Positions 24,383 to 63,074 of a stretch of 64,000 bases of DNA are shown here, piece by piece. Source of the DNA: Octopus sinensis (Eukaryota); the NCBI RefSeq assembly GCF_006345805.1, contig NC_043016.1, positions 15,004,001-15,068,000 of the forward strand. The letters are read 5' to 3'. A program made the translations under genes and the position numbers. A model generated the notes under the pieces. The model had not been told where the DNA came from. It saw only the letters and a list, made by a program, of their open reading frames with translations, and ran no database searches. How positions within the stretch are numbered: position 1 is the first letter of the stretch; each line of letters opens with the position of its first letter.

Positions 24383-24437
24383 ATGGCTGCAAAACTTCTG
24401 TCCGTCGTATATACTACTAACCGAACAATTTCCAATG
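24383..24437 (+). CDS. PEPM: PEP mutase exon 1 (start of putative mitochondrial presequence)
   Basis: ccATGGct start context, MAAKLLSVVYTTNRTISN, then a G|GTaaat phase-1 donor in a repeat-poor region with unusually many CpGs. Joins in frame to the 39154 exon. The assignment rests on phase and protein continuity rather than homology. Confidence 0.65.
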
Positions 24438-27400
24438 GTAAATATTTCCGTTTGTAAGAATTAATTGCTAAGATCTTTTTTCTTTTTTTTTGTTGTTTTA
24501 TTTATTCGCGCACCTTCGTGAACAGCACGAAGCTGTCTGTAATGATACGTTTCATAGCCCACAACATATTCATGACGTTGCTAATTGCTAACAATTATAT
24601 TTTTTAAAAATACATACCCACAAAAGGGGATAATAGTTATATAGATATTTCTGTTTTTAACTCAAAACGTAAATTACTATGGTTTCGGTATTGTTTTTGT
24701 GCAATTAGGGTGTATGAAAATGTTATACGCGAATTATCCTTTGTTTCTGAATTAGGTAAAATAGGAAAAGAAGAGAGAGAGAGAGAAAGAAAAAAAAAAG
24801 ACATCTACTTAAAAAACATGAATGTGCGAGAAAACAACAATTAATAAATATCTGTCTTTTGTTCGGTTTGTTTCCGGACTTCTATGGAGTTAGAATATCC
24901 GATAATTCCTTGATAACGTAATAATACTCGTACCGTAGGGTGGATGGGAGGAATTCGAGATTAATTATGGTTTAGAGCTATAAATAATTACAGCTCTTTG
25001 TATGACTATAGCTAAAATTACAGAGCCGTTGACGCTTGATATGCTACAAATAACAGCTCTCAAACCACACTTTTCTCTTTAAAAAAAAAAAACCCAAAAA
25101 ACTAGAAGTTGTCCAATTAGATTTATATTATAAAGACGCGATGGTCGCAGCTAGAAAGCTTAAGTTTGGCGGCCAAACAACACGAATTTAATTATAAATA
25201 ATTGTCAGAACTGTCTAAATGAAAAAATGACACATCGACTGTCGCTAAGTTGAAGATTTAGTGGTACTTTACTCAGCAGTGGAATTATAATTCCTTATAA
25301 GAATAGAGAGTTTAAGACGATTTGAGAGTTATGAGCACGTGGCATATCGATCCAACTCCAGTCCAAACTTTTTAAATTATAATTCCATTCGCACCATTGA
25401 AGACGCTTTCTTAGCAATATTAAATCAATCCCCTATACCAATCCAGAGAGTGTTCCAACCACGACTGTCCAATGGTAATCTACAAATAACATCAGAATAT
25501 AATGCTCCACTTTCACTATGCCAAACTATAGTTAGTTTCATTTCGTTTAGCAACCGGCAAAGTTCATTTTTTTAAAAAATCTATTTTATTTTTTTTTTAT
25601 CATAGACTTGAAGCATTATTATTTTTTTTTGCGTTACTCATTTTCGTTGTAGAATTATTTTACTAGTCTAACTATGTATCTATTATACACGCACACACAC
25701 ATATACGCGTGTGTGTGTGCGTGTAGTGTGTATATGTAAATACACTACACGTATATCAAGAAAACGTCCCCACCCCCAACGATTTCGTTTCAGAAAAATG
25801 GATGGTTTTTAATGAAATTTCTATAAATGGATACGGTACTAGTAGCGTAGTCGTGGCACATTTGGCAAGTGTCTTCTGCTATAGCCCCGGGCCGACCAAA
25901 GCCTTGTGAGTGGATTTGGTAGACGGAAACTGAAAGAAGCCTGTCGTATATATATATATATGTGTGTGTGTGTATGTTTGTGTGTCTGTGTTTGTCCCCC
26001 TAGCATTGCTTGACAACCAATGCTGGTGTGTTTACGTCACCGTCACTTAGCGGTTCGGCAAAAGAGACCGATAGAATAAGTACTGGGCTTACAAAGAATA
26101 AGTCCCGGGGTCGATTTGCTCGACTAAAGGCGGTGCTCCAGCATGGCCGCAGTTAAATGACTGAAACAAGTAAAAGAGTAGGTGGATATCGGGCTCGACT
26201 CAATACTTTGGGTGGAGGGACACCACTGACTTTTGCTGGTCTTGAATAAATTCCATCGGTCATATGTTGAGTTCTGATTGTCAGGAAACATTTAATTCAC
26301 TTAGGCGCGGTCCCAGGAATCTTTCGAAGAGAGGGCACGAGGTCAAAAGGGAATACAATTCCAGGATAAAAGGGTGTAATAACATTATTTAGAAGGGTGC
26401 ACTTCTTTTCTTGGGTGGGGTACGTGCCCCTCAGGCCTCCACTCCCTCCTTGGATCCGCCCCTGCCACTACAGTACCTTTCCACGGATTCCAGTGTTGGA
26501 TAATATAATTAGCAGAATGCTATGGGTGGCTTTGTCTAAATCAGAGGTTCTTCAACCGGGCTCCATATGGCTTTTGGGGGATCTGTATAAGATTTTTGGG
26601 AGTCTTCGCTGGCAAAAAGTAAATTGGGGATCCACAATAGGGTCTGTAAAATGTTTTGATGTAAATGTGTCTATTGCAAGAAACACGTTTCGGTAACTAT
26701 TTCGTAAAGGACCCGTTCGCAAGTTTTTGTTTTCTTTTCCAGGTTCTTTCGCATTCTTTCGATGAACCTCAATCTTCCTCATCTTGATATTTTCACAGAG
26801 AAATATCGGTGGGTCCTTTATCGCAAAAAGCTGTTACGCGGTAGCAAAACGTGCTAGAAATACCAGCCAAATTCTTTCCTTTTCTGTAGAAAGGAGCTGT
26901 ATACGAGTGATTTCGATGTCACATTCGTTGAAAGCATGTGAAATAACCTGGAAAAGAAAAAGAAACCCGCGAAACAAAACTCCCACCACCCTCCCCTTTC
27001 TTTTCCGGGAAAAAGTGGTTTGTGGCAGGTTTGGTGGTCAGATACGTTGAATGCACTCAAAAAAAGTGTAGAAAAAAATTATTTCAAACCGAGGTACGAA
27101 ATATTTATGGAAGTGTGTACAAAATTAGTTTTTAAACATCGAATGGCTGTGGGAGTCCACCAGAATAATATAGTGAACGAAGGGGTCCGCAGATAAAAAA
27201 AAAAATGGTTGTGTCACTGGTCTAAAGCTTGTCGAAGTAAATGACATCTATGTTGTAGCTCCCTAGCTAAGTATACGGAATGCCATCTAAGTGGTGCAGG
27301 GACTGTGATTGACAGTCTCTGTCACCGACGATTTTTCTCGAGGCACCCAGTGGTTAGGACAGCGGACTCGCGGTTTCGATTCCCAGACCGGGCGTTGTGA

Positions 27401-28363
27401 GTGTTTATTGAGTGAAAACATCTAAAGCTCCACGAGGCTCCAGCAGGGGGTATTCGCGAACCCAGCTGTACTCTTTCACCTCAACTTTCACTTTTTCTTC
27501 CTGTTTCTATTGTATCTGTATTTCAGAGGGCCAGACTTGTCACATTCTGTGTCACGCTGAATCTCCCCCAAGAACTACCTTAAGGGTACATGTGTCTGTG
27601 GAGTGCTCAGCCACTTGCACGTTAATTTCACGTCTTCGTAAACGACGGGGTGCCACAATATAATGCTATAATGTCTGTGCGATGGACTCTGCTGTCGACT
27701 GCGATGTGTATGCATCCATTGGCTGTTCGACCAGACAAGACACACTATTCATTGAATTAGTGTGCGAAGAGTCTGAGTATTTCATAGACATAAGTACCCT
27801 TAACGTAATTCTTGGGTAGAATCAACGTGACACGGTGAGGCAAGGCTGTACCTTATATGCACACCCAACACTTATCACCAGTTTGACAAAGTGAAAGTGA
27901 AGCGTTAGCCCAAATTGTCTTCTCTTTTTTTTGAGTAAGTAGGTTGTTGTTTAAAGGGAATATGGTTGCTTCTAGCAACGGTTCGTTGTTGTGTAGCCTC
28001 GGCTGAGTTATATGTCATCCAAATCGGTCAACCGAACGATAAATCACCACATACATAACTGTCTTCCTTGTTAAATAAGGTCACCGTTTAAAACAAAGAC
28101 CATACTACACTACACTGTGACATGCAGGGAAGAGTCTATGGAGTGCAGTGTGTTAATCTGTGAAAGTTGCTCTCACTCCATTATCCAGTTTATTTCGGTG
28201 CACCCGTAATTTATGGTGATGACTACACAGTGGTATATCATTTGCTTTGCCCGTCCTGTGCATTAACCAGTTACCCACTCCCTTAAACATACCTTAAAAT
28301 ACAACAAATCGCGTTCTATTCACCCCGCTAATATCACGTCCTGTTATTGTGTTCGCAGTTGAA

Positions 28364-28905
28364 CTAGGGGGCGGAATTCTCTTTTAAGCACCCCATATGA
28401 CTTCTCATAACTTGGGGGGGGGGGGGATTTTCAGTAAAATTTTGCGAATTTGTCTTCTAAACACGGGAATTCATACAATTGTGAAAAAAAAATTGTATGT
28501 ATGATTTAAGAGCGAGATAGCTAGTGTTTTTGCACATCCCACGACTACCTGATACCTTCCTAGTTTCTTTGCCACTCTGACATGGATTAATGTTTTTCAA
28601 TATATATTCCTTTTCTCCCTATAAATATATTTAATGGAATACTGATGCACTTCAAAGTGGTTCAATGTTGGGATTTAAGCCAAGTATTCGATCTGCCGTA
28701 CTTTAAACTTCGGGAAAAAAAATCGAAAAAGTGGAAATTTTAGGATTCGTGGTTGGAGGGACGCTTTAAAAAAATTTCGTTTTTAATAATCGTCTGAATT
28801 CCCGTGTGAAGAATACAATTTCGCAAAAAATTCCTGAAAATTCCTCAAAATAGAAAAAAGGTTATGAGGGATTATATTGGGTACCTAAACCAGAATTCCG
28901 CCTAA
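28364..28905. mobile_element. MITE/fold-back element with long imperfect inverted arms
   Basis: ggcggaattct / agaattccgcc termini. 28425-28472 is an imperfect reverse complement of 28795-28843. Confidence 0.45.
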
Positions 28906-29819
28906 GTGGGAAAAGTTGACTCAATCAGAGCGCAACAGTTGTCATTTCCCAGCCCTTACTATTCAGTGGTGTGCATCCTAGTAGAGTGTTTGAGACCAGT
29001 GACTCTATTAAAATTGCTGCTATTTCCAAGATATAAACCACCCTGCTTTTATGCTTTGTTCTGGCTAAGAAAGGGATAAATGATTTTTTTTTTTTTAAAG
29101 GTGTTTGTAAGTGTGTGTGAACGGGTTGTTGGACGTGGTTTTTAATGCTGTGACAGAGACTGCAGGCATTACAATTCGGGAAACATCAAACTCATCTTTT
29201 TGCATATCCAAGTGGCTTTACATTCTTGTGTTAATGTTTCGGTGCGTGCGTGTGTATAAATTCTTATGGTGCATAGCGTGCGATTTTTTTATTCTTCGAA
29301 GTTTATTGTGGTTTTGTTACGGAGAGGTAGCGGGGGTACAGGGTAGGATTGATAGATCATGATGAATTTAATGTCTTGTTTGTACACCTTTGTATTTTTT
29401 ACATATTTCGCTCTTATGTTTGCACATTTTTTTTTTTTATGGAGGTTGTGAGGAATTTGTATGTAACTTTTAGTACCTTGTCTTTGGTGTTCTATGTTAT
29501 TTCTTCTGGGAGTTGGTAGAAATCATGTCTTTTGACTTCACATTGATAAATAAAGTACTACTCTATGGAGAACTTTTGGAATAGTTGTCCTCAAAACCCT
29601 TATATCAAGAGGATAAAAAGGAGTAGTGTTTGGGGTTTTTTTAAATGTTTTTTAAAAGTATTTCTCTGTTTCATGCAACACAATTCTGAACAATTCAGAA
29701 CAATTTTCTTCCAAAAATTTCAGTTTTCCCTCTCCCACTTTTACCTTCCCCTTGAGTGTAGGACTTCCAAGGAAGTTGTTCCAAAAATCTGCCCGCTCCT
29801 CCTCCTCCTCAGCACCACC

Positions 29820-29851
<32 letters not shown>

Positions 29852-31559
29852 TGGCAACCTGGAAGAATCGTTAGCATACCTGGCAAAATGCTTCGCAGTA
29901 TTTCGCCTGTCTTGGTTCAAATTCCATTAAGGTTGAATTTTTGAATTTGCCTTTCGTCCTTTCAGGCTTGATATAACATAAGTACCAGTCAAGAACTGAA
30001 CTCAATGAAATCAACTAGCTCCCTCTTTATAGTAGAAGCAGTTATTATTATTATTATTAAAGTGGTAACCAGACAAAATTGTTAGCATGTTGGTCAAAAT
30101 GCTGAGTGGTATTTCTTGGGCGGCGAGCTGGCAGAAACGTTAGCGCGCCGGGCGAAATGCTTAGCAGTATTTCGTCTGCCGCTACGTTCTGAATTCAAAT
30201 TCCGCCAAGGTAGACTTTGCCTTTTATCCTTTCGGGGTCGATTAAATAAGTACCAGCTACGCACTGGCGGTCGATGTAATCGACTTAATCCGTTTGTCTG
30301 TCCTTTCTGTGTTTAGCCCCTTGTGAGTAGTTAAAGAAATAGGTATTTCTTGGGCCTTTTTGTCTTCTGAGTGCAAATGCCACTAAGGTCAAATTTACCT
30401 TTTGATATTCGTAAAATAAGCACTGGTCAAGCACTGAGGTTGATATAATCCACTTGTGACCTCCTCTAAAATTGCTGGCTTTGTGCCGAAAATTATAAAG
30501 AATTATTAAAAAGAAGGAGATGAAGGAATTATTAGTGAGAAGGAGATTGTGAATTTGGTTAATGCAGCAATTTCTGGAGAAATGCAGGAAGATGTGTGTG
30601 TGTGTGTCTAATGTCATCATTGTATGAGACTGTGTATGTTTTGTGTGGAACATGAAAAAGTCATTAAGTTATAGGTTGAAATAATCTTTTCTACTCTAGG
30701 CCTGAAATTTTGGGGGAGGGGCCAGTCAATTAGATTGACCTCAGTGCACAACTGGTACTTAACTTATCAACGTCGAAAGGATGAAAGGCAAAATCGACCT
30801 TGGCAGAGTTTGAACTCAGAACACAAAGACAGATGAAATACCTATTTCGTTACTACCCACAAGGAGCTAAACACAGAGGGCACAAACAAGGACAGACAAA
30901 TGGTCGATTCCATCGACCCCGGTGCATAACTGGTACATAATTTATCAACCCTGAAAGAATGAAAGGCAAAGTCAACCTCGGTGGAATTTGAACTCAGAAC
31001 GTAATGGCAGACGAAATATGGCTACGCATTTCGCCCGGCGTGCTAACGTTTCTGCCAGCTGGCCGCCTTTATTGGCTGAAAAAATGAGTGCAAAATGAGA
31101 GGATGATCCTTGTGGTTCTCCATTGAAGAAATTAGAGGATCTGCAAGTATTGTTCTTGTGCATGGCATCAGCTTGGCTGTCTGACATCTTGTTTACTAAC
31201 CAGACTACCCCCTTAACCCTTTAGCATTTAATCCCACCGTATCTGGCCAAAATATTCTACTTGTTTTATGTTTAAACTGACCACACCTACCTTACAATAT
31301 CATTCTAAAAATATACAATCGCAGCATTGAAATCTTGAAGCTACAAGACAATGCGTGATTAAATCAAGACAATGTAAGTAAATGAACCTTATATTTTACA
31401 AAGAATTCTGAATTCTAAGACATTAGACATTAAGGGAGTGTTCAGTACATTTGCTGTTCTTTTTCTTTCTTTTTTTTTTTTAATGAATGGTGAGCAGAGA
31501 ATGGAGTTGAAGGCTTTGTTAATATTAATAGGAATTAAAACATTGTGTCGTTTTTTTTT

Positions 31560-32700
31560 TGTTTGTTTTTTCCATTATTATAACAACCATGTATTTTTTG
31601 TGTTAAATTTGTTTGTAATGGGTGGCTGAATGTAGCAGTCTGAATCCATATTGTGATTTGGTGAACAGAAAATGTGCGGAAGTGATGTAAAAAGATTAGT
31701 TTTCTTAGAACTTCTGAAAATATGCATAGGAGGGTGATGGGTTTGTGTGATGATACTTGGGCATTTGTTGGACTTTAGAATTGCAACAGTTTTATCCAGC
31801 TTCCAGATTATGGGAATTTAACAATTTTCTAAGCAAAGTGGTGAATTCAGTGACTCCTTCAGGCTGTAGGTATTTAAAGTGTATGGGTGTGATTCAGTCT
31901 GGCCCTGAGGTCTTTGAGATTTTAGGTTTCTCTGTGTCCTTTTCTGTTTCTGTTGAAAGAAGGGAATTTTCCTTTCCCATGAAATATGGGACTTGATGGC
32001 CAGCTATTGTAAAATTTCACTGAGATTTTTACATCTGTTAGCCTGTCCAATTTTTAGTGGTTTATTCTTGTACCACTCCTAACACTTTAGTAGACAAGAA
32101 AGATTGCAGCTCAGTAACGAACAACAGCTTTAATACATCAGACGATCTTGGCCTAATTGTTTGCCAATAGTATTTTAGCTACAATCATTCAATTGTATGG
32201 CTCTGAATGGAAATTTCCATGAGTTTCTCACCAAAACATGGCTGTAAATTGAGATGAATGCCACACATTAGACAGAAGCAGCAGAAGTCCATAAGAAAAC
32301 AAGTTTCTTGGTCACTGCTCAACCCCAGGTTAAAAAGAAATCATTTGTCTACCATGAACACAGAATTTTCTTGCTTCTCACAACATGAAGACACAGATAT
32401 TTTTCCTAGCAAGTATGTAGTCATATCTCTAGTAATAAAGGTTTATCTAGATGCTTCTGGCATACAGCTTACCCTTGGCAGAAGCCTCTGTTTATATTTC
32501 TGTAAATAAATGGTTTCCTTGAAAACATCAAATGAACTTGGTTTTGATATGGTAACAGCACACCCAGAATCAGCCCTACCAATTATTCAACATCCATTTG
32601 ATCAAGTTCCTAAAAGTATCTCTTAAGATCCTTTTTAATGTTACAGCAATTAGCGTTGTTATTAGCATTATTAAGGTAATAATCAAGTATTTATGAAAGG
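31560..32700 (-). mobile_element. Possible highly decayed Penelope-like reverse transcriptase relic
   Basis: Minus-strand LAIKSHISWERKIPFF loosely resembles the PLE RT segment (H)PSIKFTxExE...LPFLD. Many stops; weak evidence. Confidence 0.3.
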
Positions 32701-35700: not shown

Positions 35701-35734
35701 AAAATGGTTGGGATTAGGAAAGGCATTAGGCCTT

Positions 35735-36040
35735 AGAGACCATGTCAAAGCAAGCAGTAGGGCTTGGTGTACTCCTCTGGCTTGCCAGCTCCTGCCAAAC
35801 TGTCCAAGCCATGCTAGCATGGACAGTGGACTTTGGATAATGATGATGATGGTAGTGGTGGTGGTGGTAATGGCAGCAGCAACAGCAGTGGTATTGGTGG
35901 CACTGCTGCTTCCACTCCACCATCCTTATCATCATCCTCCAAAGTCCATTGTCCATGCTAGAATGGCTTGGACAGTTTGGCAGGAGCTGGCAAGCCAGAG
36001 GAGTGTGCCAAGCTCTACAGCCTGCTTTGGCATAGTTTCA
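35735..36040. repeat. About 115-bp inverted repeat pair (tail-to-tail RTE 3' UTR remnants)
   Basis: actcctctggcttgccagctcctgccaaactgtccaagccat (from 35771) is exactly reverse-complemented at about 35963-36004. Confidence 0.85.
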
Positions 36041-49413: not shown

Positions 49414-49494
49414 CGCCATTCCACCAGAGTATCACAATAATAATAATATTAATAATAATAATAATAATGATAATAATAATAACAATAATAATAC

Positions 49495-50560
49495 ATTGTC
49501 AAAAGCTAGGAAGTAGTTGATGATGTATGGAGCCCTCCATCCGAAAGCTGACATCAACCGGCTGCACTTGGGGAGAGACGAGGGTGGAAGAAGCTTAATA
49601 GCAGCAGAGGGATATGTATAGATGAAAAAAGAAAACGTCTAGTAGAGTGTTTACAGAGCAGCACAGAAAAACTGCTAAAGAGAGCGAATAAAGAACAGGG
49701 GATGAAGCACATGATAGGAGAAAAAGACAAGAATGAAATACGAAGAGAGCACATCAGACAAATCAACCCCTGCATGGCTAATTTTAGAGAACCGCCGAAG
49801 AAGTATGTGGAACAAAATTCTGGGCTGGATTAAAATAACGAAAAAAAGAGAAATAGTCTAATTGTAGCAGCCCAAGATCAAGCAATAAAAACAAACCACT
49901 TGAGAAAAAATATATATGGAGAGAATGTATCAGAAAAATGTAGAGCTTGTGGAAATTGGAACGAGAAAGTGGTACACATTGTGGCTGAAAGCACCAAACT
50001 GGCACAGGAAGAATATAAGAAATTGAAGCATGACCAGATTGTAAAAGCTATACTCTGGAAACTGTGCCAGAAATGGAGATTTGAAGCTGGAAACATGATA
50101 CAATCATTGAGTTGAAAGAGTACTGGAGATTTTGTCAGACTTTCCTATTGAAACGGACATGAAGTTAGAAAATAATAGACCAGACTTCATGATTATAGAT
50201 GAGGAAAGGTGAAGTTGTTTACTTATTGACTTGTCATGCCCATTTGATTCCAGGATAATAAAGAAAGAGTAAGAAAACAAAAAAAACACAATCCCTTAAA
50301 ATTTGAAATAAGAAGAATTTGGAGCGTGAGGACAGTAATGGTCATTTCTATAATAATTGGTGCGTTGGGAAGAGTAAGGAAAGATGTAGACAAATGGCTG
50401 AAGGAGATGGAAATAGAATGTTCTGTAGAGCTTCTACAGAAAGTTTGTCTCTTAGGGACAACAAGGATTATCAGGAGAGTTCTAAGCACCTGAAAGACTT
50501 TGGAAAATTTGAGAACACCTAAGGTTACAGGTAAAAACCAAACCTGAGCCAAACCAAAAT
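49495..50560 (+). mobile_element. 5'-truncated R4/Dong-like LINE flanked by (AAT)n on both sides
   Basis: MYGALHPKADINRLHLGRDEGGRSLI, CRACGNWNEKVVHIVAE...YKKLKHDQIV, NNRPDFMII, IIIGALG and LQKVCLLGTTRII fragments. AAT tracts at 49437-49492 and 50558-50577. Confidence 0.85.
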
Positions 50561-52616: not shown

Positions 52617-52771
52617 GTAGTAGTAGTAGTAGTAGTAGTAGCAGCAGCAGTAACAGTAGTGGTTATGGTAGTGGTAGTAGTATTAGCAGCAGTAGCAGTA
52701 ACAGTTGTTGTTATGGTAGTGGTAGTAGTAGCAGTAGTAGCAGCAGTAGTAGTAGTAGTAGTAGTAGTAGT

Positions 52772-52803
<32 letters not shown>

Positions 52804-52905
52804 TAGAGCAGCAGCAGTAGTAGTAGTAGTATTAGTAGTAGTAGAGCAGCAGTAGTAGTTGTAGTAGTAGTAGCAGTAGTAGCAGCAGCACTAGTAGTAG
52901 TAGTA
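52617..52905 (+). repeat. Compound (AGT)/(AGC)n microsatellite
   Basis: Direct reading; lies about 130 bp upstream of the PEP mutase exon 3 acceptor. Confidence 0.95.
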
Positions 52906-53035
52906 GAAGAAGAATAAGAAGCTGCCGTTTTTGTTACTTTTCTAGTGAATTCTGTTGATTTGTTGCTAAATTAGTATATTTTTAAAAAGTGGAAATTGAT
53001 TTAATTTGTTGGGTTTTTATTTTCTAATTAAACAG

Positions 53036-53132
53036 AAAACAACACAATTAAAACAGATGCTGCTTTCAAAAGAACTTGAATTCATCATGGAAGGCCACAA
53101 TGGATTGAGTGCTCGAATAGTTCAAGAAACTG
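53036..53132 (+). CDS. PEPM: PEP mutase exon 3
   Basis: aaacAG acceptor, GTaacg donor, 97 nt. Reads [32 protein letters not shown], with the PEP mutase/ICL-family E(A/G)HNGLSA motif. Confidence 0.95.
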
Positions 53133-55004
53133 GTAACGTATATTTTTAATTTGCTGTCGTAATTACTGAGTGGTCTTGGTTATCTCTACTTCAGCAGATT
53201 AAAGTCTAAAGACCCCCCCTTCGGTCATGAATGACCATGGAATTACACCTAGAAAGTTCCCCACCAATGCACAAGTCTAGGCAAGGTTGTTTATCGATGA
53301 ACAGCAGTCACCCATGCATGCCAGCCTCACCTCTCCATGCCATTATATGTATGTAGTGTAAAGGGTAATGACCCGCTTCGGTCATGAATGACCATGGGAT
53401 TGCACCTAGACAGTTCCCCTCCAAAGTACAAATTCAGGCAAAGTTCTTTATGGAAGACCATCAGTTATCCATGCATACCAGCATCCCTTCTCCATGCCAT
53501 TGACCTTATCCAAGAGAAAGACGAAGGCTGACACAGCTTGGCACCAGTGACATCGCAACTCATTTCTACAGCTGAATGAACTAGAGGAATGTGAAATATA
53601 GTGTCTTGCTCAAGAACACAACACACAGCCTGGTCAGGGAATCAAACTCACAACCTCATATTTTATGGCCAGAGTAGAAGAAAATTAAAAGACATTTAAA
53701 GACACGTTCCACTCATCTCAACAATTGTGCCTCAAAACATGGTCAGTTATGCCAGTCATTGCTATCATGGTGAAAATGTGGCTGTGCCACATGTTATATT
53801 TTGGAGAATTCTCTACATTTATAGAGAGATTAAGACTACTTAACTATGTTGATGTTATTGGAACTGACATAAAACGTAAAGTTAAGGACATGGCAAAGTT
53901 AATGGGGTGCTGAGGTTCATGGAAGGGCATAGTAAGATGCATTTTGGCTGTAGCTGTTTCAAGAAGATACATGTGTGTGTGTGTGTGTGTGTGTGTAGTT
54001 TTGAAGTTGTAGAAAACCCTTACATTTGTTGAGTTAAATTTTGGTCAAACTACCCTTTGAAATTAATAATCAATTAAATTAAACAAATTAATAGATAATG
54101 AAATTTTTTTTAAATGCATGGCACCTTGGACAAGTGTCTTCTACTATAGCCTGGAGCCAACCAAAGCCTTGTGAGTGGATTTGGTAGATGGAAACTGAAA
54201 GAAGCCTGTTGTATTTGTGTGTGTCTGTGTGTGTGTTTGTTCCCCCACTATTGCTTGACAACCGATGTTGGTGTGTTTATATCCCCGTAACTTAGTGGTT
54301 CGGCAAAAGAGAATGATAGAATAAGTACTAAGATTACAAAGAATAAGTCTTGGGGTCGATTTGTTCGACTAAAGGCAGTGCTCCAGCATGGCTGCAGTCA
54401 GATGACTGAAACAAATTAAAAGAATAAAGAATTACAAAATTTCGAAAGCAGATTCTTTTTCCAGATAAATGCAAACATGAACTGCAAAAGCGGAAACCAA
54501 TTCTATTGTGCAGACTGCCCCATCTGCAAAGAAAATGCCATTCCTCAGATTAGAAAATCTCTTTGTGAACAGAAAAGAGCATATCAACAGCAGATTAAAC
54601 AAACGGAATTACAGGGGAATTCCATATTGTGACCATTTAGAAATCTGGGGGGGGGGGGACGACAAATTCAGGATTTTCTCATTCTTTAAATGCCCAAGGA
54701 ATAACCCAAAATACAAGAAAGAAATGGAAAAACATTTAATCTGAAAATTTATTCCAAAATTTAACACATCATCAACATCATCATTATCATCATCATCATC
54801 ATCATTTAATGTGTGCTTTCCATGCTGACATGGATTGGACTGACACATAAAACAGATAATTTTATTTATAGAAAAAGAATTTTATCAAAAAAATGTCTTT
54901 TCCAGATGAACCAAACTAACTTCCCACCAGATGTTAATGTTGTAATTGTTGTTGCTGATAGTATAACAAGTCACTGCAAAAAAGATTTTTTTAAACAATT
55001 ACCA

Positions 55005-55322
55005 TGCACACACACATACACACATGTAAATACACATACATATGTAAATTCACACACATACATATGCAAGCACACAGACACACACATATGTAAATACACA
55101 CATACATATGTAAATACACGCATACATATGCAAACACACACATACATATGCAAAATGCACACACATACATATGTAAATACATACACATACATATATAAAT
55201 ACATACATACATATGCAAACACACACACATACACATGCACACACACATACATATGCAAACACACACACATACACATGCAAAACACACACACACACACTTA
55301 CACACACACACACACATGTATA
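55005..55322 (+). repeat. Compound CA/TA microsatellite
   Basis: Repeated acacacatacatatg(c/t)aaa units; explains the long HT/VC ORFs in the track. Confidence 0.9.
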
Positions 55323-55559
55323 TATCTATTATATTTTACTTGTTTTTCAGCAACTGGAGTGCTGCCAGGCGGGAGCACTGCCTGGCTACACACATTGGTG
55401 ACTCTCACCTTACTAACTGCAGACCTATGCATGGCTTGCACACCTCTCGCTAACCATTCATCTATCCCTAGCTTCTGCATTGCCCACCAGATAGAGCAGT
55501 GGGGGAGAGATTTCCAATTATAGGTGGTGGGGCAGAAATGGGTGAGTGCATCTCAAATA

Positions 55560-55880
55560 AGGAAAGGCAGTAGGATTGCTCCTTTCTGAAATAGAGGATA
55601 TGATACAACATTCAAAGGTATTTTGAATCGATGTCAAGCCTTTGTCGCCTTGTTTCCATTTAAGGTAGAGGTGGTCTACATCACTGTTGATGTGGAAATT
55701 ATGTGTACTGGTTAGTAACAACGGCTTGGATCTCATCAAGCATCCAGTCAAGCAGTCGAAATGTTGGATATGATTACTGGCACTGCAAGCACATTGTGGG
55801 CCACTGTTTTACTGAATGCAGAAAGTTCTGAGGTCCAAACTTTCTTTATTCGGCTGTAATATTCTTTGGTGACATGTGTT
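55560..55880 (-). mobile_element. R4/Dong-like LINE fragment
   Basis: Minus-strand LLTSTHNFHINSDVDHLYLKWKQGDKGLTSIQ resembles the post-RT HPxxDxxRLYxxRxxGGRGL segment of the other two copies. Confidence 0.6.
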
Positions 55881-56759
55881 TTGTTACAGGTACCATTGTA
55901 AGATGTGTGTGTGTGTGTGTGAGTGAGTGAGAGAGAGAGAGAGAGACAGCTGTGTAGATGTTTATTGCATCAGAAAAGTTGTTTGCAGTAAGAGATTTGT
56001 GTTGATTCACTTGGAATAACTTGGAATGTTATTAATAAATGTATTGATTTAACACCGCCAAGAAGTAAAGAGTCTTTACTAAGTTGTATTTAATAAATGA
56101 TTCAAGTCAAAAGAAAGCAGGAACATATATTTGTTCTTCAAACATATTTGACTTCTTTTATTATTTTATATTGATCTTAGTCATTGGACTGCTTAAATGC
56201 TGTGGACCATCTCAAACAGTTCACAGTAACATCAACAATAGTTACAATACCCTGAAACAAATGTTGCTATCTCTTCATGGTCCTGTTTTTCTAATTCCCT
56301 AACCCCAAGTCAAACTTTGTTGAACAAACCTATGGTCAAATATGTTTCATCCACATTTGTCTTTTATTTTTTTTTAGGATATTTTTGGGTATATGTAAAA
56401 CTACATTAGATTATATTGTGCCACATACACTATACCTAATTATCGGGAGAACAGGCAGATTGGTTCCATATGTAGACAAGGTGTAGTAGAATTCCCATAT
56501 GGTGTACTCAGTGCAAACTATAGACATATAAGAGGTGTGATGAAATCAATAGAAGATTAATAGAGAATGTGGAATTTGTCTTTGTCAAATGTGCAGGAGC
56601 AATAAATGATAAGAGCACAAAGGAAATGGATGTTCTGAAATGCTGAGGAGTAGTAGATATTTTCTGTAACCTAAGTGAGGAGGATGCTCTGAAAGTATGG
56701 CTGCTAGAATACTAATTGGCTGGAGAAAGTTTAGAGAACTTTTACTTCTGTTGGTAAAG

Positions 56760-57140
56760 AAAGGTCACTCTCTCAGAATTATAGGCAGATTGTATGATGC
56801 TTGTGTAATGAAGAGCAAAGCTACATGTCTGTGATACTTGGGTTGAGAAAGCAGAGAACATGTGAAGGCTTGAAAGAAATGGATGTGCAATGACAGTGTG
56901 CTTAGAGAAAAATAAGGCATAAAAGACATCAGATGTGGTTTGCAGGAGAGAAGACTGGACTGGTGTGATCATGTGATGCAAATGGATGAAGACAGTTGTA
57001 TAAAGAAGTGCAGATCATTAAACATGGAAGGAATTTGTGGAAGAGGGCGACCGAGGAAGATAGACAAAGTGGTGCAAACTGACCTCAAGATGTTGAGCTT
57101 CTCAGAGGAGATTTAAGGCTGAGATGATTAATGTTGTGCT
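56760..57140 (+). mobile_element. RTE LINE C-terminal fragment; a second RT fragment lies on the minus strand at about 55380-55510
   Basis: ggcagattgtatgatgcttgtgta...gcatcagatgtgg...gaagactggactgg parallels 48715-49050. The minus-strand KLGIDEWLARGVQAMHRSAVSKVRV parallels KLRIDKWLVRAVQAMYRDAVSKVRV. Confidence 0.65.
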
Positions 57141-58356
57141 GTGCTTGATAAGACCCATCCATCTCAGTAGAACTGAGGGTCTGTCAAGCCTTCCCCCATA
57201 ACTCATTTTCTGTTTCCTTCACTTTCTTCTACACTGAACTGATGTCCTCTGCATCCAATTCATTCCCCTTTTCAAATCATCTCTCACACTATTTTCACTC
57301 TGTACACTTACCTACACATCCACCTTTTCCCCTCTTTTAACCTATTCTCTCTCATATTCCTGTTGTACCTGGGCCTCACATATCTTTCTCTCTCTCATTT
57401 TCCAGGTAGGCAAGCCCATGCATTCACCTCTTCAGCAAGACATCTGCCCCTCTCCCTCTGTCCCAGTTTCTTATTCCTCCAGTCTATACCCTGCTCACTC
57501 GAGTGGGGGAATCTTACCTTGCAAGTACTTGGTGACCTCAATGGTGCTGGTACCACATAAGAAGCACTCAATACACTCTGGTCAAGTGGTTGACATTAAA
57601 AAGGGCATCTGGCTGCAGAAACCATGCCAAAGAAGATACAGAAGATGGTGGAAACCTCCTGGCTCATCTGTTCTTGTTCAACTATCCAACCCATGCCAGT
57701 ATGGGAAAAGAGATATTAAAGGATAATGATGATGATCATGATGACTTCTATGACGACAGCACTGCCACCACCACTGCCACCTTGGTTGGAATGTCTATGA
57801 TCATTAGTCTGCAAGTCCACTACTGATTTGCACAACTTATCAACGGTTTTCTAATGAAATTCCAAGTTGCTGAAATCACTTTTACTTACATCAGCAGAAC
57901 ATTTATATAATTATGACAATTTTTAATTATAAAATTATATTATGAAACACAATACCAACCATCGAGGCATTTGCTTAATATTCAATAGACCATGTGTGTT
58001 TTTCTTATAGTATTTTGTTAGAGAAATAGTCATTCAGCTACTTTTATACATGTACAATGTCTATATTCCTTGATCAAATGAGCCTTGAGAAGATTATATT
58101 TCACTTATGAGGTCTAATAAGATAGAAACATTCATTGCTGTCTCCCTTGTTTATGAGTGAAGATCAGATTTTCCTCAAAAATAAGTAAATTGAATTTTAT
58201 GTAAAATTAGTTCTTAATTTCTTGGACATGTTTTCCCCCTTCTTTGGGAGCTGACAACAGATGCCATTAGGTTTTTGATTACTTTCTTCAACTAATTTTC
58301 AGTCTATTAAGAATTTATGGTGTATATTTAGTGAATCATGAAAATTACATTAAATC

Positions 58357-59259
58357 TACAAAGTAGTATCAACAAGTTCCCGGACTAGTTATGTTTAATA
58401 AAAAATGACTCATTTTCCTAAGTTTTAACATCATCTTCTTTGAAATAGTCACCTTGTACAGCAATACACCTGTCCCAGCATTCCTGCCAGTTTTAGAATC
58501 TGGCCCAGAAGTCATTTTCCATTTGAAGACCTTCTATATTTTGCTCTGGATTTCAAAAATAGTGTTAAAGTGGTGACCTTTGAGCTTAACTTCATCTTGG
58601 GAAAGAGATGGAAGTTCTACAGGTGCTAAATCTGGCAAATTGGGTGGGTGCAGAAGTGATGCCATGTTGTTTTTGGTGAGAAATTCACAAGTGAGGAGAG
58701 CTTGGTGACAGGATGGCATTGTTATTGTGAAGAATCCAATTCATCACAGATGTTAGGATTGCCTGCACAGCCCCAAATGACAAACAAACAACACCAGCAA
58801 TATCATTGATTCTCCTCTGGCAATCCCATGCACAAGATGATGAATGTTCTCCACATTTCTAAGAGTGATGTCATTGGCAGGTCTTCCTCATCATCTTCCA
58901 GAGATATTCTTCTGCTTTTGAAGTACCAATGCCACTTGAAACATTGCATACAACCCATTGCCTCATCACCATGAGCTTGCCAAAACATACTCAATGTCTT
59001 TGTAGCAGACTCCCCAAGTTTAACACAAAATTTCACATTGGCTCTTTGTTCCAACTTCCTGTCCATAGCACAAATTGCAGACTACAGCAGACATGTGATC
59101 ACAAAATCACAAATTTCAAAGTAAACACAATGATGTCACTCAGCACACCACTGCCTCATGAAGGTCACTGCAAGCTTTCACTGTGCACACAACCAGGTGC
59201 TGTCATCTGTTAGCCTGCTACTGAACTAGTCCGGGAACTTTTTGATATCACATCATATA
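58357..59259 (-). mobile_element. Internally deleted mariner transposon with TIRs
   Basis: TIRs atca(a/c)aaagttcccggactagt at both ends. Minus strand reads MDRKLEQRANVKFCVKLGESATKTLSM at the N-terminus and LLHPPNLPDLAP, a decayed YSPDLAP motif, near the C-terminus. Confidence 0.8.
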
Positions 59260-59596
59260 CTAGCTATATTCTTAATTAACATACAAATACATTAACATTA
59301 TGTTGATTTCAAATTTTGGCACAAGGCCAGCAATTTCAAGAGAGGGAACTAGTTGATTATATCAACCCCGGTTACTGGTACTTATTTTATTAATCCCAAA
59401 AAGATGAAAGGTAAAACCAATCTCAGCAGAATTTGAATTCCATAAAGACAGATGAAAGACCTCTAAGCATTTTATCTGGCAAACTAACAATTCTACCAGC
59501 TAGCCTTCTTGCACTAACATTATATTACGAATGTATAACCTCCTTGTTAACCCTCTTAATTAATATCAACAATATATTACCCTAGCTCAGCTTAAT

Positions 59597-59734
59597 ACAG
59601 TTCTATATTTAAGTGATGAGGAATTATTTACATTATTTACAATTGACGGATATTTGTCCTCATCTTGTTTGTTGCTAACACAACATTTCGGTTGATATAC
59701 CCTCCAGCCTTCATCAGTAACCTGAATAATAATG

Positions 59735-59765
<31 letters not shown>

Positions 59766-59927
59766 TAACAGCAACAACAACGAAGAATACGTTAGGAATG
59801 AGAACCCAGGTTTGAAGTTTCCCCAAGACACCTGATGAAGGCTGGAGGGTATAACAGCAGAAATGTTGTGTGAACAACAAACAAGATGAGGACAGATATC
59901 CGTCAAATGTAAATAATGTAAATAATC
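59597..59927. mobile_element. Penelope-like inverted termini flanking an (AAT)n tract, with minimal hammerhead-like cores
   Basis: 59624-59717 and 59832-59927 are about 93-bp inverted repeats with few mismatches. Both carry CTGATGAAGGCTG...CA(G/A)C(A/C)GAAATGTTGTG. Confidence 0.55.
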
Positions 59928-60617
59928 TAGCTTAGCTTGTTATGAAAATTTCCAGTGCAGTTGCACATTGAAGAAGTTGAGGATCTGAAATGTGTATATA
60001 ATAAAGAATAACATGTGACATTCATTTCATTAAATTTTGATATTGTGTCGCATGTTTAATTGACAAAAGATTTCTCACGGCCAATGCTTTGAAGTGGAGT
60101 GGCTTTAAGAAAAGATATAATAAAACAGTTCTATTAAGATGCAGCTTGCTTTCTTAATTTTAAGAAATAGTTTCAAGAAATATGTGTTTGAAGTCTTAAA
60201 CATGTGAATAGTTGTGCTACACCTGTTTTTTTTTTTTTTCACACTTATTATTTCACCCGTTTTAAATAACAAGCTAATGGAAAAAATCAGTTTAAATAGT
60301 TGTTTGATCTACCAGAAACATCAGCCAAATGTTCAAACCACATCCTACTGTCATAAAAAATTAAAGACACTTTTACTAATATATTCTGTGAAAATATGTT
60401 GGAATGATCATAGCCAGACTGTGATTTGTCATCCCATTGTCCCTAATCAGCACTGACCTTGGGTTAAACAGTACTTTGATCTTTGAAAATTCATTCCAGA
60501 TTTTATTTTCCATGGGTCTTTAAATAAAGTAAATATTTTGAAAGATTAAGTTATTTTATATTAATTAAAAATATTATTTTTGTTTATTGTATGTTTTTTT
60601 TTCTTTCTATTTGTTAG

Positions 60618-60830
60618 GTTTCAAGGGGATTTGGGGCAGTGGGCTTTCAATTTCTGCTCAGCTTGGAGTCCGTGACAGCAACGAGGCATCATGGACCCAA
60701 GTCCTTGATGTTGTAGAATATATGTCAGATGCTACCGATATCCCAATTTTATTAGATGCAGACACAGGCTATGGCAATTTCAATAATGCCCGACGACTTG
60801 TCAAAAAATTGGAAGAGCGAGGCATAGCAG
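60618..60830 (+). CDS. PEPM: PEP mutase exon 4
   Basis: ttgttAG acceptor, GTaaat donor, 213 nt. Reads (G)[70 protein letters not shown], with intact WGSGL, RDS and DADTGYG motifs. Confidence 0.97.
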
Positions 60831-61469
60831 GTAAATAATCAACAAAATACCTTTTTCTAATGACTTCTTATCATTGACAATTGCTATTGTATGATAGTAA
60901 GTTCTTGGAGAATTAAACTTGGGATGTAGTTTTGTTCATATTTGAAACTAATTTATGTTGATAACGACTTGTAAAAGACTTTGAACTATAACTTTTCCCA
61001 TTCCATTGTTAATCTTTTATGATGCATACTTCTGTTGGTGCCACTAATTTTATGTTTGCTTTATCACCAAATGTGTGTCATTTATTTTCATTCATTTATT
61101 TTATTTCAAGAATTTTCAAAGAACCTGACATGTAATTCTTATTTTCACATAAATTGTCTTCTAAAATAAGCAATAGCTAAGATAGTGAAGATTTAGACCC
61201 ACATCAACTGCAACTAGTCCAGCTCCAGATGTAATGTGCAAGATCAAAAGGTAGCACCTGTCGTTTGTCCAGTGTAAGGAATCTTTATCATCCATTTCAG
61301 TTTGTGTCTTGGATGTTCATCCCAATTTAACTGCAATAAAAAATAACCAAATAAAAAAGATATACCAAAGGAACTCCTCAATACAAACGCTCAGTTTTCT
61401 TATGGAAGAAAAATGGAAAAGATTTTGGACACCAAAGTGTGATAATGAACCGTATTTAGTGATACTAAC

Positions 61470-62362
61470 TGCCATGGTTTGGGGATTTAATCTCATTACA
61501 TACCATCTTAAGCAAATGTTTTTGGCCCTTTTGACTTCGCAGGGTCTTGTGAAGGAAATTTAGTAGATGTAAACTGTGTAAAAACATTTTAGCGAGGCAG
61601 TTCCTGTTCTTGGGTTGTAGATGTAATCCAACATCCAGTTTAATGCCAGCATCTGGCCATTGGATACTTGTGAAATTCATTTTGTTGTAAACATTCTTCA
61701 AATCAGTCTTCTCACAGATTATGGCCTCTGTCACGAAATCTCCTATGAGCTGTTTCTCCTTCAACCAAACCATCAACAGCTTCTCCATATTTTCATGGAT
61801 AGATGTCTACTGTTTAGAAATTGTTTTAACACCCTTGACTGGCGTTACAGCCTTTATCGATTCCTCCTGCTTCAGTATGGTGCAAATCATAGAAGTGCTA
61901 CACTCATACTGCTTCGTTGTGTCAACTACACACCTTGATCATGTTTTTTGATAATTTCTTTCTTTAATTCAAAGCTCATTGTCCACTTCTTCGTACCCAC
62001 TGTCCTTCGCACTCACTCTCTACGGACCCATGGTTTCTAAAACAAAGTTTTGCAAAATAACTGCAAGCACAACACTGATGCTTCTGTGGCCTGCAATGAC
62101 TAATTAAGCATTTTAGCACCTGTCTAGCTAACGATCTTTGCACTTGCTAACATGCATCTCTATCGAGCTATAAGACACAGGATGCTGGGCAGATGTCATG
62201 GTGTTCACTGTGGTGTGCGCTATGCCAACAAATGGTGGAGTATCTGAAGCTGGTTTGTAACCCAAATTTTAGTTTGCAACTCAAAGCAAAAAAATTGGCC
62301 AAGAGACAACACGTATCTCAAAAACTCGTTAGTTGGGACACTCGTAAGTCAAGGTACCACTG
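61470..62362 (-). mobile_element. Tigger/pogo-like DNA transposon 5' part (CENP-B-type HTH)
   Basis: Terminal cagtggtaccttgacttacgag on the minus strand. Decayed MGP...ELKKEIIKKH...ICTILKQEESIK...MEKLLMVWLKEKQLIGDFVTEAIICEK. Confidence 0.8.
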
Positions 62363-62973
62363 TGTATTATATATATATATATATAATATATATATATATA
62401 ATATATATATATATATATAAAATGCAAGCAAGGCTGTGTGGTAAGAAGTTTGTTCCCTAACCACATGGTTCTGTGTCCAGCCTCTGGCTAACCGAAGCCT
62501 TGAGAGTGGATCTGATAGATGGAAACTGAAAGAAGCCCATCATATGTGGGGGTGGGTGGCTGGATGTCTTTATGGTTGTATCTGTCCCCCATTATCACTT
62601 GACAACCAATATTGGTTTGTTTATTTCCCTTTAACTCCGTTGTTTGGCAAACAGATGCTGGAATAAGTAGCAGACTTAACTAAGAAAAGTAAGAAATTAG
62701 GGTCAATTTCTTCATCTAATCCCTTCAGGGACGTGCTCCCGCATGGCCACTGTGCAATGACTAAATCAAGTAAAGGATAAAAGATGTTATACTTATATAA
62801 GAAACACTGGACCACTAATTCCGTTCAATCTAACTCACAGTTTATTGAAGGAGTAGTTATTTCTTTCATAATCTTAAGTTAGTTTCATTTTTCTTCACAC
62901 ATTTTACCACATATTTCTTTGTAAAGATAATTGTTTCCACCTACATATTGTTTTTCTTTGTTTGCCTTTACAG

Positions 62974-63074
62974 GTGCTTGTATTGAAGACAAATTATTCC
63001 CTAAAACAAATTCTTTATTAGATGGAAGAGTTCAACCATTGGCAGATATTGAAGAATTTTCTCTTAAGATCAAG
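62974..63074 (+). CDS. PEPM: PEP mutase exon 5 (gene continues beyond the window)
   Basis: tttacAG acceptor, GTattg donor, 101 nt. Reads (G)[33 protein letters not shown] and contains the EDKxxxxxNS motif that separates PEP mutases from other ICL-superfamily enzymes. Confidence 0.97.

What the first reader, a model, noticed from the sequence alone, without database searches (positions are those of the whole stretch)
24383..63074. Intact, intron-containing PEP mutase: endogenous phosphonate (C-P bond) biosynthesis in a probable cephalopod
Seen: five exons splice with consistent phases into 178 uninterrupted codons with WGSGL, RDS, DADTGYG and [10 protein letters not shown] motifs. The 534 coding nt are spread over about 38.7 kb (introns of 14.7, 13.8, 7.5 and 2.1 kb). 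Known: PEP mutase is the committed first step to phosphonopyruvate and 2-aminoethylphosphonate, and is biochemically characterised in mussel. Inference: this animal makes its own phosphonates rather than relying only on diet or symbionts. The ORF track catches only two of the five exons in frame, so automated annotation may truncate the gene.
Basis: partly seen in the sequence, partly recalled or inferred. Interest (0 to 1): 0.7.

Follow-up and report, generated by a model that had tools for sequence, protein, structure and literature searches.

The report
Octopus PEP mutase gene, first half
The window holds the first five of nine exons of the Octopus sinensis gene for phosphoenolpyruvate mutase, the enzyme that makes carbon-phosphorus bonds; the gene is real and the animal's own, but it is already annotated and the chemistry is long known in molluscs.

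Summary
Five + strand exons (24383-24437, 39154-39221, 53036-53132, 60618-60830, 62974-63074) join through GT..AG introns of 14716, 13814, 7485 and 2143 bp into 534 nt, or 178 open codons.

Residues 38-178 align without gaps to residues 3-143 of the crystallised Mytilus edulis PEP mutase (E 3e-79, 87% identical). All cited motifs and every active-site residue in this half are kept.

Window 14383-64000 is 100% identical to Octopus sinensis chromosome CM016878.1. The 178 codons equal the first 178 residues of RefSeq XP_029648658.1 (330 aa).

- **Extent:** the window holds exons 1-5 of 9. Exons 6-9 lie 1.4-19 kb past the window end and are intact.
- **Annotation:** the fear that automated annotation truncates the gene is refuted.
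- **Endogenous origin:** all eight intron positions are shared with a scallop and four with Nematostella. Animal sequences form one clade. dN/dS against O. bimaculoides is 0.07.
- **Product:** the phosphonolipid ceramide aminoethylphosphonate (CAEP) has been measured in O. vulgaris.

I could not confirm the next pathway enzymes in the octopus genome.

Verdict: correct reading of a known, annotated gene; low novelty.

The parts
24383..24437 (+). Coding exon 1 (codons 1-18 plus 1 nt). Start codon in the context ACCATGG, with an in-frame stop 36 nt upstream. It encodes the start of an N-terminal extension that bacterial PEP mutases lack.
   Evidence: Identical to residues 1-19 of XP_029648658.1.
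24438..39153 (+). Intron 1 (14,716 bp, phase 1, GT..AG), filled with SINE-like interspersed repeats.
   Evidence: The same position and phase occur in O. bimaculoides, Argonauta and Pecten.
39154..39221 (+). Coding exon 2 (codons 19-41). It encodes the rest of the K/R/S/T-rich, acid-poor N-terminal extension, a probable mitochondrial presequence.
39222..53035 (+). Intron 2 (13,814 bp, phase 0). It contains decayed retrotransposon and mariner-like fragments, microsatellites and SINE-like repeats.
   Evidence: The position is shared with Pecten and Nematostella.
53036..53132 (+). Coding exon 3 (codons 42-73 plus 1 nt). The conserved catalytic domain starts here (KTTQLKQML...[15 protein letters not shown]).
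53133..60617 (+). Intron 3 (7,485 bp, phase 1).
   Evidence: The position is shared with Pecten and Nematostella.
60618..60830 (+). Coding exon 4 (codons 74-144). It carries WGSGLS (Mytilus Ser46/Gly47/Leu48), RDS (Asp58) and DADTGYG (Asp85/Asp87, Mg2+ site).
   Evidence: It is 87% identical to Mytilus residues 40-110.
60831..62973 (+). Intron 4 (2,143 bp, phase 1).
   Evidence: The position is shared with Pecten but not Nematostella.
62974..63074 (+). Coding exon 5 (codons 145-178). It carries the PEP-mutase-specific [10 protein letters not shown] motif (Glu114, Lys120, Asn122, Ser123) and the active-site gating loop. It is the last exon inside the window.
   Evidence: The motif definition comes from PMC6697681.
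63075..64000 (+). Start of intron 5 (2,327 bp in the assembly). The gene continues past the window. Exons 6-9 sit at window-equivalent 65402-65519, 77400-77479, 81955-82131 and 82980-83063.
   Evidence: using locus L001 (O. sinensis CM016878.1).

Best explanation
The window (Octopus sinensis chromosome CM016878.1, about 15,004,001-15,068,000) contains exons 1-5 of the animal's own nuclear gene for phosphoenolpyruvate phosphomutase (EC 5.4.2.9; RefSeq protein XP_029648658.1, 330 aa, nine coding exons over 58.7 kb).

By close homology to the crystallised Mytilus enzyme, the protein is an alpha/beta-barrel, Mg2+-dependent enzyme. It moves the phosphoryl group of PEP from oxygen to carbon-3 to give phosphonopyruvate, the only common biological route to a C-P bond. 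The equilibrium lies far towards PEP. Flux therefore needs a coupled phosphonopyruvate decarboxylase and then a transaminase to give 2-aminoethylphosphonate. That compound ends up in ceramide aminoethylphosphonate (CAEP) and glycan modifications, which are abundant in molluscs.

- **Shown here:** the gene structure, its identity, conservation of active-site residues, purifying selection, and vertical descent within animals.
- **Inferred:** catalytic activity in octopus, coupling to downstream enzymes, and mitochondrial import through the 41-residue N-terminal extension encoded by exons 1-2.
For: **Gene model**
- Five GT..AG exons give 178 open codons.
- They are 100% identical to residues 1-178 of XP_029648658.1.
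- Window 14383-64000 matches the O. sinensis assembly over 49,618 bp with no mismatch.
- Exons 6-9 are present downstream, and the full splice translates exactly to the 330-aa protein.

**Family**
- E 3.4e-79, gapless, 87% identical to Mytilus edulis PEP mutase 1M1B residues 3-143.
- PF13714 hit at E 5.8e-29.
- The full-length protein scores 397 bits against a 319.55-bit cut-off for the TIGR02320 equivalog. It falls below the cut-offs for phosphonopyruvate hydrolase, methylisocitrate lyase and CPEP mutase.
- The EDKXXXXXNS motif that separates PEP mutase from the rest of the superfamily (PMC6697681) is present as [10 protein letters not shown].
- Thirteen Mytilus active-site residues are conserved, eleven of them in the window.

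**Endogenous and functional**
- All eight intron positions and phases are identical in O. bimaculoides, Argonauta hians and the scallop Pecten maximus. Four are shared with Nematostella.
- Twenty-four animals plus Capsaspora form one side of a branch against bacteria (SH-aLRT 99). Octopus plus Argonauta has support 100 and sits inside a mollusc group.
- dN/dS for O. sinensis against O. bimaculoides is 0.07.

**Product and pathway**
- 29 CAEP species were measured in O. vulgaris muscle (PMC12335516).
- A transcript in O. maya is annotated as phosphonopyruvate decarboxylase (PMC6522055).
- A coral genome has intron-containing pepM, ppd and aepT (PMC3640398).
Against: - No enzyme assay or expression data for this octopus gene were available. 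No transcript contig encoding exactly the Octopus protein was on record.
- I could not show a phosphonopyruvate decarboxylase or AEP transaminase gene in the O. sinensis genome. My one search from a bacterial seed returned only bacterial or unnamed hits.
- The window alone carries only 54% of the CDS. It lacks Arg159 and His190 and the C-terminal swapped helix.
- The mitochondrial presequence is inferred from composition and conservation only.
Confidence: 0.92

Rival explanations
1. The locus is a decaying or unexpressed relic (pseudogene), and octopus phosphonolipids come from diet or microbes.
For: No direct expression evidence was obtained here. The introns are very large and full of repeats.
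Against: All nine exons are open with canonical splice sites. dN/dS is 0.07 between two Octopus species, with 19 of 24 differences synonymous. Exon structure is identical in four cephalopod and bivalve genomes. All active-site residues are kept.
Confidence: 0.03
2. The sequence is bacterial or symbiont contamination, or a recent horizontal transfer, rather than an old animal gene.
For: Bacterial PEP mutases of the same subfamily are unusually similar. They are 60-71% identical over the full length and up to 80% over the N-terminal half (P0081 on a dense bacterial contig).
Against: There are eight spliceosomal introns inside a 33-Mb chromosome scaffold surrounded by octopus repeats. Intron positions are shared with scallop and sea anemone. 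Holozoan sequences form a single clade. A eukaryote-type N-terminal extension is absent from bacteria.
Confidence: 0.01
3. The protein belongs to the PEP mutase/isocitrate lyase superfamily but does a different job in vivo. Examples are phosphonopyruvate hydrolase, methylisocitrate lyase, or running in the favoured reverse direction to salvage dietary phosphonopyruvate or phosphonoalanine.
For: The superfamily is functionally diverse, and the N-terminal half also hits these families weakly. The equilibrium of the mutase reaction favours PEP (established knowledge; Bowman et al. 1988, cited in PMC6697681).
Against: It is 80% identical over 295 residues to the biochemically characterised Mytilus mutase. 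It passes only the PEP-mutase equivalog cut-off. It has the mutase-specific EDKXXXXXNS motif. CAEP is abundant in octopus.
Confidence: 0.04

Closest known systems
Octopus sinensis phosphoenolpyruvate phosphomutase, RefSeq XP_029648658.1. Orthologues: O. vulgaris CAI9734832.1, O. bimaculoides XP_014769947.1, Argonauta hians.
   Same: It is the same gene. Residues 1-178 are 100% identical, and the genomic DNA is 100% identical over 49.6 kb. There is 1 difference from O. vulgaris and 3 from O. bimaculoides in this part.
   Different: Nothing differs. The window simply stops after exon 5 of 9.
Mytilus edulis PEP mutase (PDB 1PYM, 1M1B, 1S2T-1S2W), the structurally and kinetically characterised animal enzyme.
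   Same: It is 87% identical over the window part and 80% over all 295 residues, without gaps. All listed active-site residues and the gating-loop motif are kept. The scallop Pecten maximus, another bivalve, has the same nine-exon gene structure.
   Different: The octopus protein, like the genome-predicted M. galloprovincialis protein, has an extra N-terminal extension of about 35-41 residues that is absent from the crystallised 295-aa construct. The octopus introns are about 4 times longer in total than the scallop's.
Cnidarian AEP pathway genes (Acropora digitifera pepM with 7 introns, ppd, aepT; Shoguchi et al. 2013, PMC3640398) and Nematostella PEP mutase.
   Same: This is also an intron-containing nuclear PEP mutase in an animal genome. 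Four intron positions and phases are shared with octopus.
   Different: Nematostella has six introns in a 4.9-kb gene, whereas octopus has eight in 58.7 kb. The full three-gene pathway was shown for the coral but not, here, for octopus.
Bacterial PepM/AepX of AEP gene clusters (pepM-ppd-aepZ operons, for example in Oceanobacillus, Bacillus, Cyclobacteriaceae).
   Same: They belong to the same subfamily, 60-71% identical, with the same motifs. Neighbouring genes are Ppd (TIGR03297) and AEP transaminase (TIGR03301), which shows the expected pathway partners.
   Different: They are intronless, sit in operons and have no N-terminal extension. They fall on the other side of the tree from the animal sequences.

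Membership tests
PEP mutase (EC 5.4.2.9; NCBIfam TIGR02320) within the PEP mutase/isocitrate lyase superfamily | Superfamily fold signature (Pfam PF13714 PEP_mutase) | tested here: met
   The score is 101.8 bits against a 31.5-bit cut-off, E 5.8e-29, for the 178-aa window product.
PEP mutase (EC 5.4.2.9; NCBIfam TIGR02320) within the PEP mutase/isocitrate lyase superfamily | EDKXXXXXNS motif that distinguishes true PEP mutases from other superfamily members (PMC6697681) | tested here: met
   [10 protein letters not shown] is encoded at 62985-63014 in exon 5.
PEP mutase (EC 5.4.2.9; NCBIfam TIGR02320) within the PEP mutase/isocitrate lyase superfamily | Mg2+ and substrate-binding residues of the Mytilus enzyme: Ser46, Gly47, Leu48, Asp58, Asp85, Asp87, Glu114, Lys120, Asn122, Ser123, Arg159, His190. 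The residue list comes from my knowledge of the Mytilus structure papers. | tested here: met
   All are identical in octopus. Those up to Ser123 are in the window. Arg159 and His190 are in exons 6-7 outside it.
PEP mutase (EC 5.4.2.9; NCBIfam TIGR02320) within the PEP mutase/isocitrate lyase superfamily | Whole-protein score above the curated equivalog cut-off (319.55 bits) and below the cut-offs of sister families | tested here: met
   The full-length protein from this locus scores 397.4 bits. Sister families stay below their cut-offs: phosphonopyruvate hydrolase 227.5 against 374.4, PrpB 142.5 against 354.4. The window half alone scores 179.6 bits, which is below the cut-off only because it is half a protein.
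PEP mutase (EC 5.4.2.9; NCBIfam TIGR02320) within the PEP mutase/isocitrate lyase superfamily | Catalysis of PEP to phosphonopyruvate | not testable with these tools
   This needs a recombinant enzyme assay. It is inferred from 80% identity to the characterised Mytilus enzyme.
2-aminoethylphosphonate biosynthetic pathway (PepM, Ppd, AEP transaminase) | Phosphonopyruvate decarboxylase (TIGR03297) and AEP transaminase (TIGR03301) encoded in the same genome to pull the unfavourable mutase equilibrium | tested here: inconclusive
   Neither is in the window or within 10 kb of the gene. A database search from a bacterial Ppd seed listed no named animal protein among the best 120. The literature reports an O. 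maya transcript annotated as phosphonopyruvate decarboxylase and the whole pathway in a coral.
2-aminoethylphosphonate biosynthetic pathway (PepM, Ppd, AEP transaminase) | Phosphonate end product present in the organism | not testable with these tools
   Literature only: 29 CAEP and 6 N-methyl-CAEP species in O. vulgaris arm muscle (PMC12335516). Cephalopods are listed among CAEP-containing animals (PMC9174665).

The most novel reading that the evidence does not exclude
The 27-49-residue extension is basic, hydroxyl-rich and almost free of acidic residues. In octopus, exons 1-2 encode it. It is present in nearly all animal and Capsaspora PEP mutases and absent from bacterial ones. It may be a mitochondrial import signal. 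C-P bond formation in animals would then happen in mitochondria, drawing on mitochondrial PEP, rather than in the cytosol. The crystallised 295-aa Mytilus construct would correspond roughly to the mature form.
Probability: 0.5. Interest if true: 0.3.

Novelty: already known. Interest (0 to 1): 0.12.

Why it matters
It confirms from raw sequence that an octopus carries its own conserved, selectively constrained gene for the committed step of phosphonate synthesis. That fits the abundant phosphonosphingolipid CAEP in cephalopod membranes.

None of this is new. The gene is in RefSeq for three Octopus species. Animal PEP mutase was purified and crystallised from mussel in the 1990s, and genomic AEP pathways were described for corals in 2013.

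Two modest points add something. First, the nine-exon structure has been fixed since before bivalves and cephalopods split, and half of its introns date to the cnidarian-bilaterian ancestor. Second, holozoan enzymes share a presequence-like N-terminal extension whose role has not been tested.

Tried and rejected
1. **First homologue search.** Searching with the 178-aa product missed the octopus proteins, because the tool only considers candidates up to 1.75 times the query length. I repeated it with the window product padded at the C-terminus by the tail of hit P0001. This only widened the length filter; scoring was restricted to residues 1-178. That search found the Octopus and Argonauta proteins.
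2. **Looking for a phosphonopyruvate decarboxylase in octopus.**
   - The bacterial contig carrying P0081 has no Ppd. Its pepM neighbours are a 2-hydroxyacid dehydrogenase and an ATP-grasp enzyme.
   - The metagenome contigs carrying P0005 and P0033 are eukaryote-like, with KAP exons next door and no Ppd.
   - I took a Ppd from a bacterial pepM-ppd cluster and used it as a query, with a length trick to disfavour bacterial proteins. It returned only bacterial or unnamed proteins.
   - Cluster look-ups gave no organism names. This was a dead end, and the question stays open.
3. **Other scans.** Rfam and tRNA scans of the window found nothing. Pfam on intronic ORFs gave only sub-threshold hits: HTH_48 of Mos1 transposase and a PHD finger.
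4. **dS saturation.** dS against Argonauta and Pecten is saturated, so only the O. sinensis versus O. bimaculoides ratio is usable.
5. **Rejected readings.** I considered and rejected a pseudogene, contamination or horizontal transfer, and another superfamily activity (see rivals).
Full report
**1. The observation**

I rebuilt the proposed gene model from the raw sequence. Five + strand exons are present at 24383-24437, 39154-39221, 53036-53132, 60618-60830 and 62974-63074. Their lengths are 55, 68, 97, 213 and 101 nt.

Each exon except the first follows an AG, and each is followed by GT. The phases are consistent. The joined 534 nt translate into 178 codons without a stop.

The motifs WGSG, RDS, DADTG, EDKLFPK and KTNS are in the stated exons. 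The start codon sits in the context ACCATGG. An in-frame stop lies 36 nt upstream, with no intervening ATG.

With the default 60-aa ORF list only exons 4 and 5 lie in listed ORFs. At 40 aa exon 3 appears too.

**2. What the product is**

The 178-aa product matches the Mytilus edulis PEP mutase chains (1M1B, 1PYM and others) at E 3.4e-79. Residues 38-178 align without a gap to residues 3-143 of the 295-aa enzyme, at 87% identity.

Pfam gives PF13714 at E 5.8e-29. In NCBIfam the best model is the PEP-mutase equivalog TIGR02320, at 179.6 bits for this half-protein.

Rice et al. (PMC6697681) use the EDKXXXXXNS motif to separate true PEP mutases from the rest of the isocitrate-lyase superfamily. 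It is present as [10 protein letters not shown].

From the Mytilus structural literature I know the active-site residues as Ser46, Gly47, Leu48, Asp58, Asp85, Asp87, Glu114, Lys120, Asn122 and Ser123. All are identical in the window product.

**3. Where the window comes from, and the whole gene**

A first database search missed the source species because of the tool's length filter. A second search scored only residues 1-178. It found a 330-aa cluster annotated 'phosphoenolpyruvate phosphomutase' from three species:
- Octopus vulgaris (CAI9734832.1)
- O. bimaculoides (XP_014769947.1)
- O. sinensis (XP_029648658.1)

The window product is identical to the first 178 residues of the O. sinensis protein. 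It differs at one residue from O. vulgaris and at three from O. bimaculoides.

I fetched the O. sinensis locus (L001: GCA_006345805.1, CM016878.1 15,018,383-15,097,063). Window 14383-64000 equals L001 1-49618 with 0 mismatches in 49,618 bp. The window is therefore O. sinensis DNA.

No part of residues 179-330 is encoded in the window. In L001 exons 6-9 lie at window-equivalent 65402-65519, 77400-77479, 81955-82131 and 82980-83063. All have canonical splice sites.

The nine-exon splice (993 nt over 58,681 bp) translates exactly to XP_029648658.1. The full-length protein scores 397.4 bits against the 319.55-bit TIGR02320 cut-off. It stays below the cut-offs of phosphonopyruvate hydrolase, methylisocitrate lyase and CPEP mutase. 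Arg159 and His190 are conserved in the downstream exons.

The gene is therefore intact, although the window alone could not show it. Automated annotation did not truncate it.

**4. Is it the animal's own, functional gene?**

Four lines of evidence say yes.

(a) Context. The gene has eight spliceosomal introns and sits on a 33-Mb chromosome scaffold. The introns are packed with at least three families of 200-350-bp interspersed repeats that recur throughout the window and the flanking locus.

(b) Intron positions. I derived exact exon models for four other species:

| Species | Gene span |
|---|---|
| O. bimaculoides | 71 kb |
| Argonauta hians | 11 kb |
| Pecten maximus (scallop) | 15 kb |
| Nematostella vectensis | 4.9 kb |

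All eight octopus introns fall at the same alignment column and phase in the other two cephalopods and in the scallop. Four of them (after octopus codons 41, 73, 244 and 303) are also shared with Nematostella.

(c) Phylogeny. The tree held 24 animals, Capsaspora and 17 prokaryotic (16 bacterial, 1 archaeal) sequences. The holozoan sequences form one side of a branch (SH-aLRT 99). Octopus plus Argonauta has support 100 and sits within a bivalve and chiton group.

(d) Selection. O. sinensis and O. bimaculoides differ at 24 CDS nucleotides but only 5 amino acids. This gives dN 0.0065, dS 0.093 and dN/dS 0.07.

Together these exclude contamination and recent horizontal transfer. They make a pseudogene very unlikely.

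**5. How it most likely works**

This follows from homology to the Mytilus enzyme and from established knowledge. The protein is a Mg2+-dependent alpha/beta-barrel enzyme. It transfers the phosphoryl group of PEP intramolecularly to C3, giving phosphonopyruvate. The loop carrying Lys120, Asn122 and Ser123 closes over the active site.

The equilibrium strongly favours PEP (Bowman et al. 1988, cited in PMC6697681). Net synthesis therefore needs phosphonopyruvate decarboxylase, followed by a transaminase, to give 2-aminoethylphosphonate. The bacterial relatives illustrate these partners, with pepM followed by TIGR03297 Ppd and TIGR03301 AEP transaminase genes.

In octopus the end product is documented. 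29 CAEP and 6 N-methyl-CAEP species were measured in O. vulgaris arm muscle (PMC12335516). Cephalopods are listed among CAEP-containing animals (PMC9174665).

For the second step, the only octopus evidence I found is a transcript annotated 'phosphonopyruvate decarboxylase' in an O. maya transcriptome (PMC6522055). My own attempt to find the octopus gene failed. That link in the chain remains inferred.

**6. The N-terminal extension**

Exons 1-2 encode 41 residues with no counterpart in bacterial enzymes or in the crystallised 295-aa Mytilus construct. The segment has 6 Lys/Arg, 8 Ser/Thr and one acidic residue.

Extensions of 27-49 residues with the same composition occur in nearly all animal PEP mutases and in Capsaspora. 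The genome-predicted Mytilus galloprovincialis protein has one too. A bacterial homologue starts 3 residues before the conserved KTTQLK.

This looks like a mitochondrial presequence. That is an inference from composition only. From memory, unverified here, a dual localisation was reported for the Trypanosoma cruzi enzyme.

**7. Comparison with what is known, and novelty**

- The gene is already in RefSeq and GenBank for three Octopus species and Argonauta. PEP mutase is annotated in many molluscs, cnidarians, sponges, rotifers and several insect orders.
- The animal enzyme was characterised and crystallised from mussel.
- A coral genome paper described intron-containing pepM, ppd and aepT in 2013 (PMC3640398).
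- Phosphonates in marine invertebrates have been known since the 1960s (PMC3266647).

The finding is therefore a correct reading of an already known gene. What is mildly informative is the deep conservation of the nine-exon structure, the roughly 12-fold range of gene size at constant exon structure, and the untested presequence.

**8. Verdict**

- Observation: confirmed.
- Interpretation: supported, with two corrections. Only exons 1-5 of 9 are in the window, and the annotation is not truncated.
- Novelty: already known.
- Interest: low.

Noticed in passing
window 2575-2816, 5456-5690, 14707-14938, 30119-30351, 30836-31069, 37304-37544 (family A); 16-286, 961-1160, 7069-7398, 16049-16371, 17826-18132, 49205-49413, 63495-63700 (family B); 1786-2183, 4065-4424, 16769-17100, 25854-26178, 38101-38418, 42533-42891, 54115-54431 (family C): At least three families of 200-350-bp interspersed, SINE-like repeats occur on both strands at 70-90% identity. 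They fill the introns and the upstream region and largely explain the very long introns. Family B copies contain a 62-63-bp internal tandem duplication.
   Followed up: partly
window 47160-48600 (+), 44950-45480 (-), 58534-59066 (-): Decayed transposable-element coding remnants lie inside introns 2 and 3. One is a broken reverse-transcriptase-like reading frame (motif ...YLTFVDMKKTFDRVP). Two are mariner/Mos1-like transposase fragments; the copy at 58534-59066 gives the only Pfam hit (HTH_48, E 0.0015, below threshold).
   Followed up: partly
window 52615-52906 and 55012-55294: A (TAG)n-rich microsatellite of about 98 copies ends 130 bp upstream of exon 3. An imperfect 20-22-bp ACACATAC-type array lies in intron 3.
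   Followed up: no
window 35736-36039 and 40625-41166: Two stretches match their own reverse complement (79% over 311 bp, 75% over 560 bp). They are palindromic or inverted-repeat elements inside introns 1 and 2.
   Followed up: no
L001, L089, L090, L003, L002: The exon structure is the same but gene size differs widely: O. bimaculoides 71 kb, O. sinensis 58.7 kb, Pecten 15 kb, Argonauta 11 kb, Nematostella 4.9 kb (six introns). Intron expansion appears specific to Octopus and is not seen in the other octopod, Argonauta.
   Followed up: partly
proteins P0121-P0206 (N-termini); window exons 1-2: Nearly all holozoan PEP mutases carry a 27-49-residue basic, Ser/Thr-rich, acid-poor N-terminal extension that bacterial ones lack. 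The classic 295-aa Mytilus construct starts at an internal Met of the genome-predicted 329-aa protein.
   Followed up: partly
L004 (Anaerolineales MAG contig DASUOQ010000463.1) and L005-L084: Bacterial PEP mutases of this subfamily are remarkably close to the animal ones: 60-71% over the full length, and P0081 80% over the N-terminal half. On L004 pepM is flanked by a 2-hydroxyacid dehydrogenase and an ATP-grasp ligase instead of Ppd. That suggests a non-AEP phosphonate pathway there.
   Followed up: partly
JGI sample 3300059473 contigs carrying P0005 and P0033; Logan contigs L085-L088 carrying P0123: Intronless full-length PEP mutase ORFs, 84-87% identical to octopus, sit next to split kinesin-associated-protein (KAP) exons on eukaryote-like metagenome contigs. 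A 325-aa relative with the same type of N-terminal extension occurs as 1.4-1.5-kb uninterrupted, transcript-like contigs in 19 assemblies of one sequencing project. The organisms are unknown.
   Followed up: no
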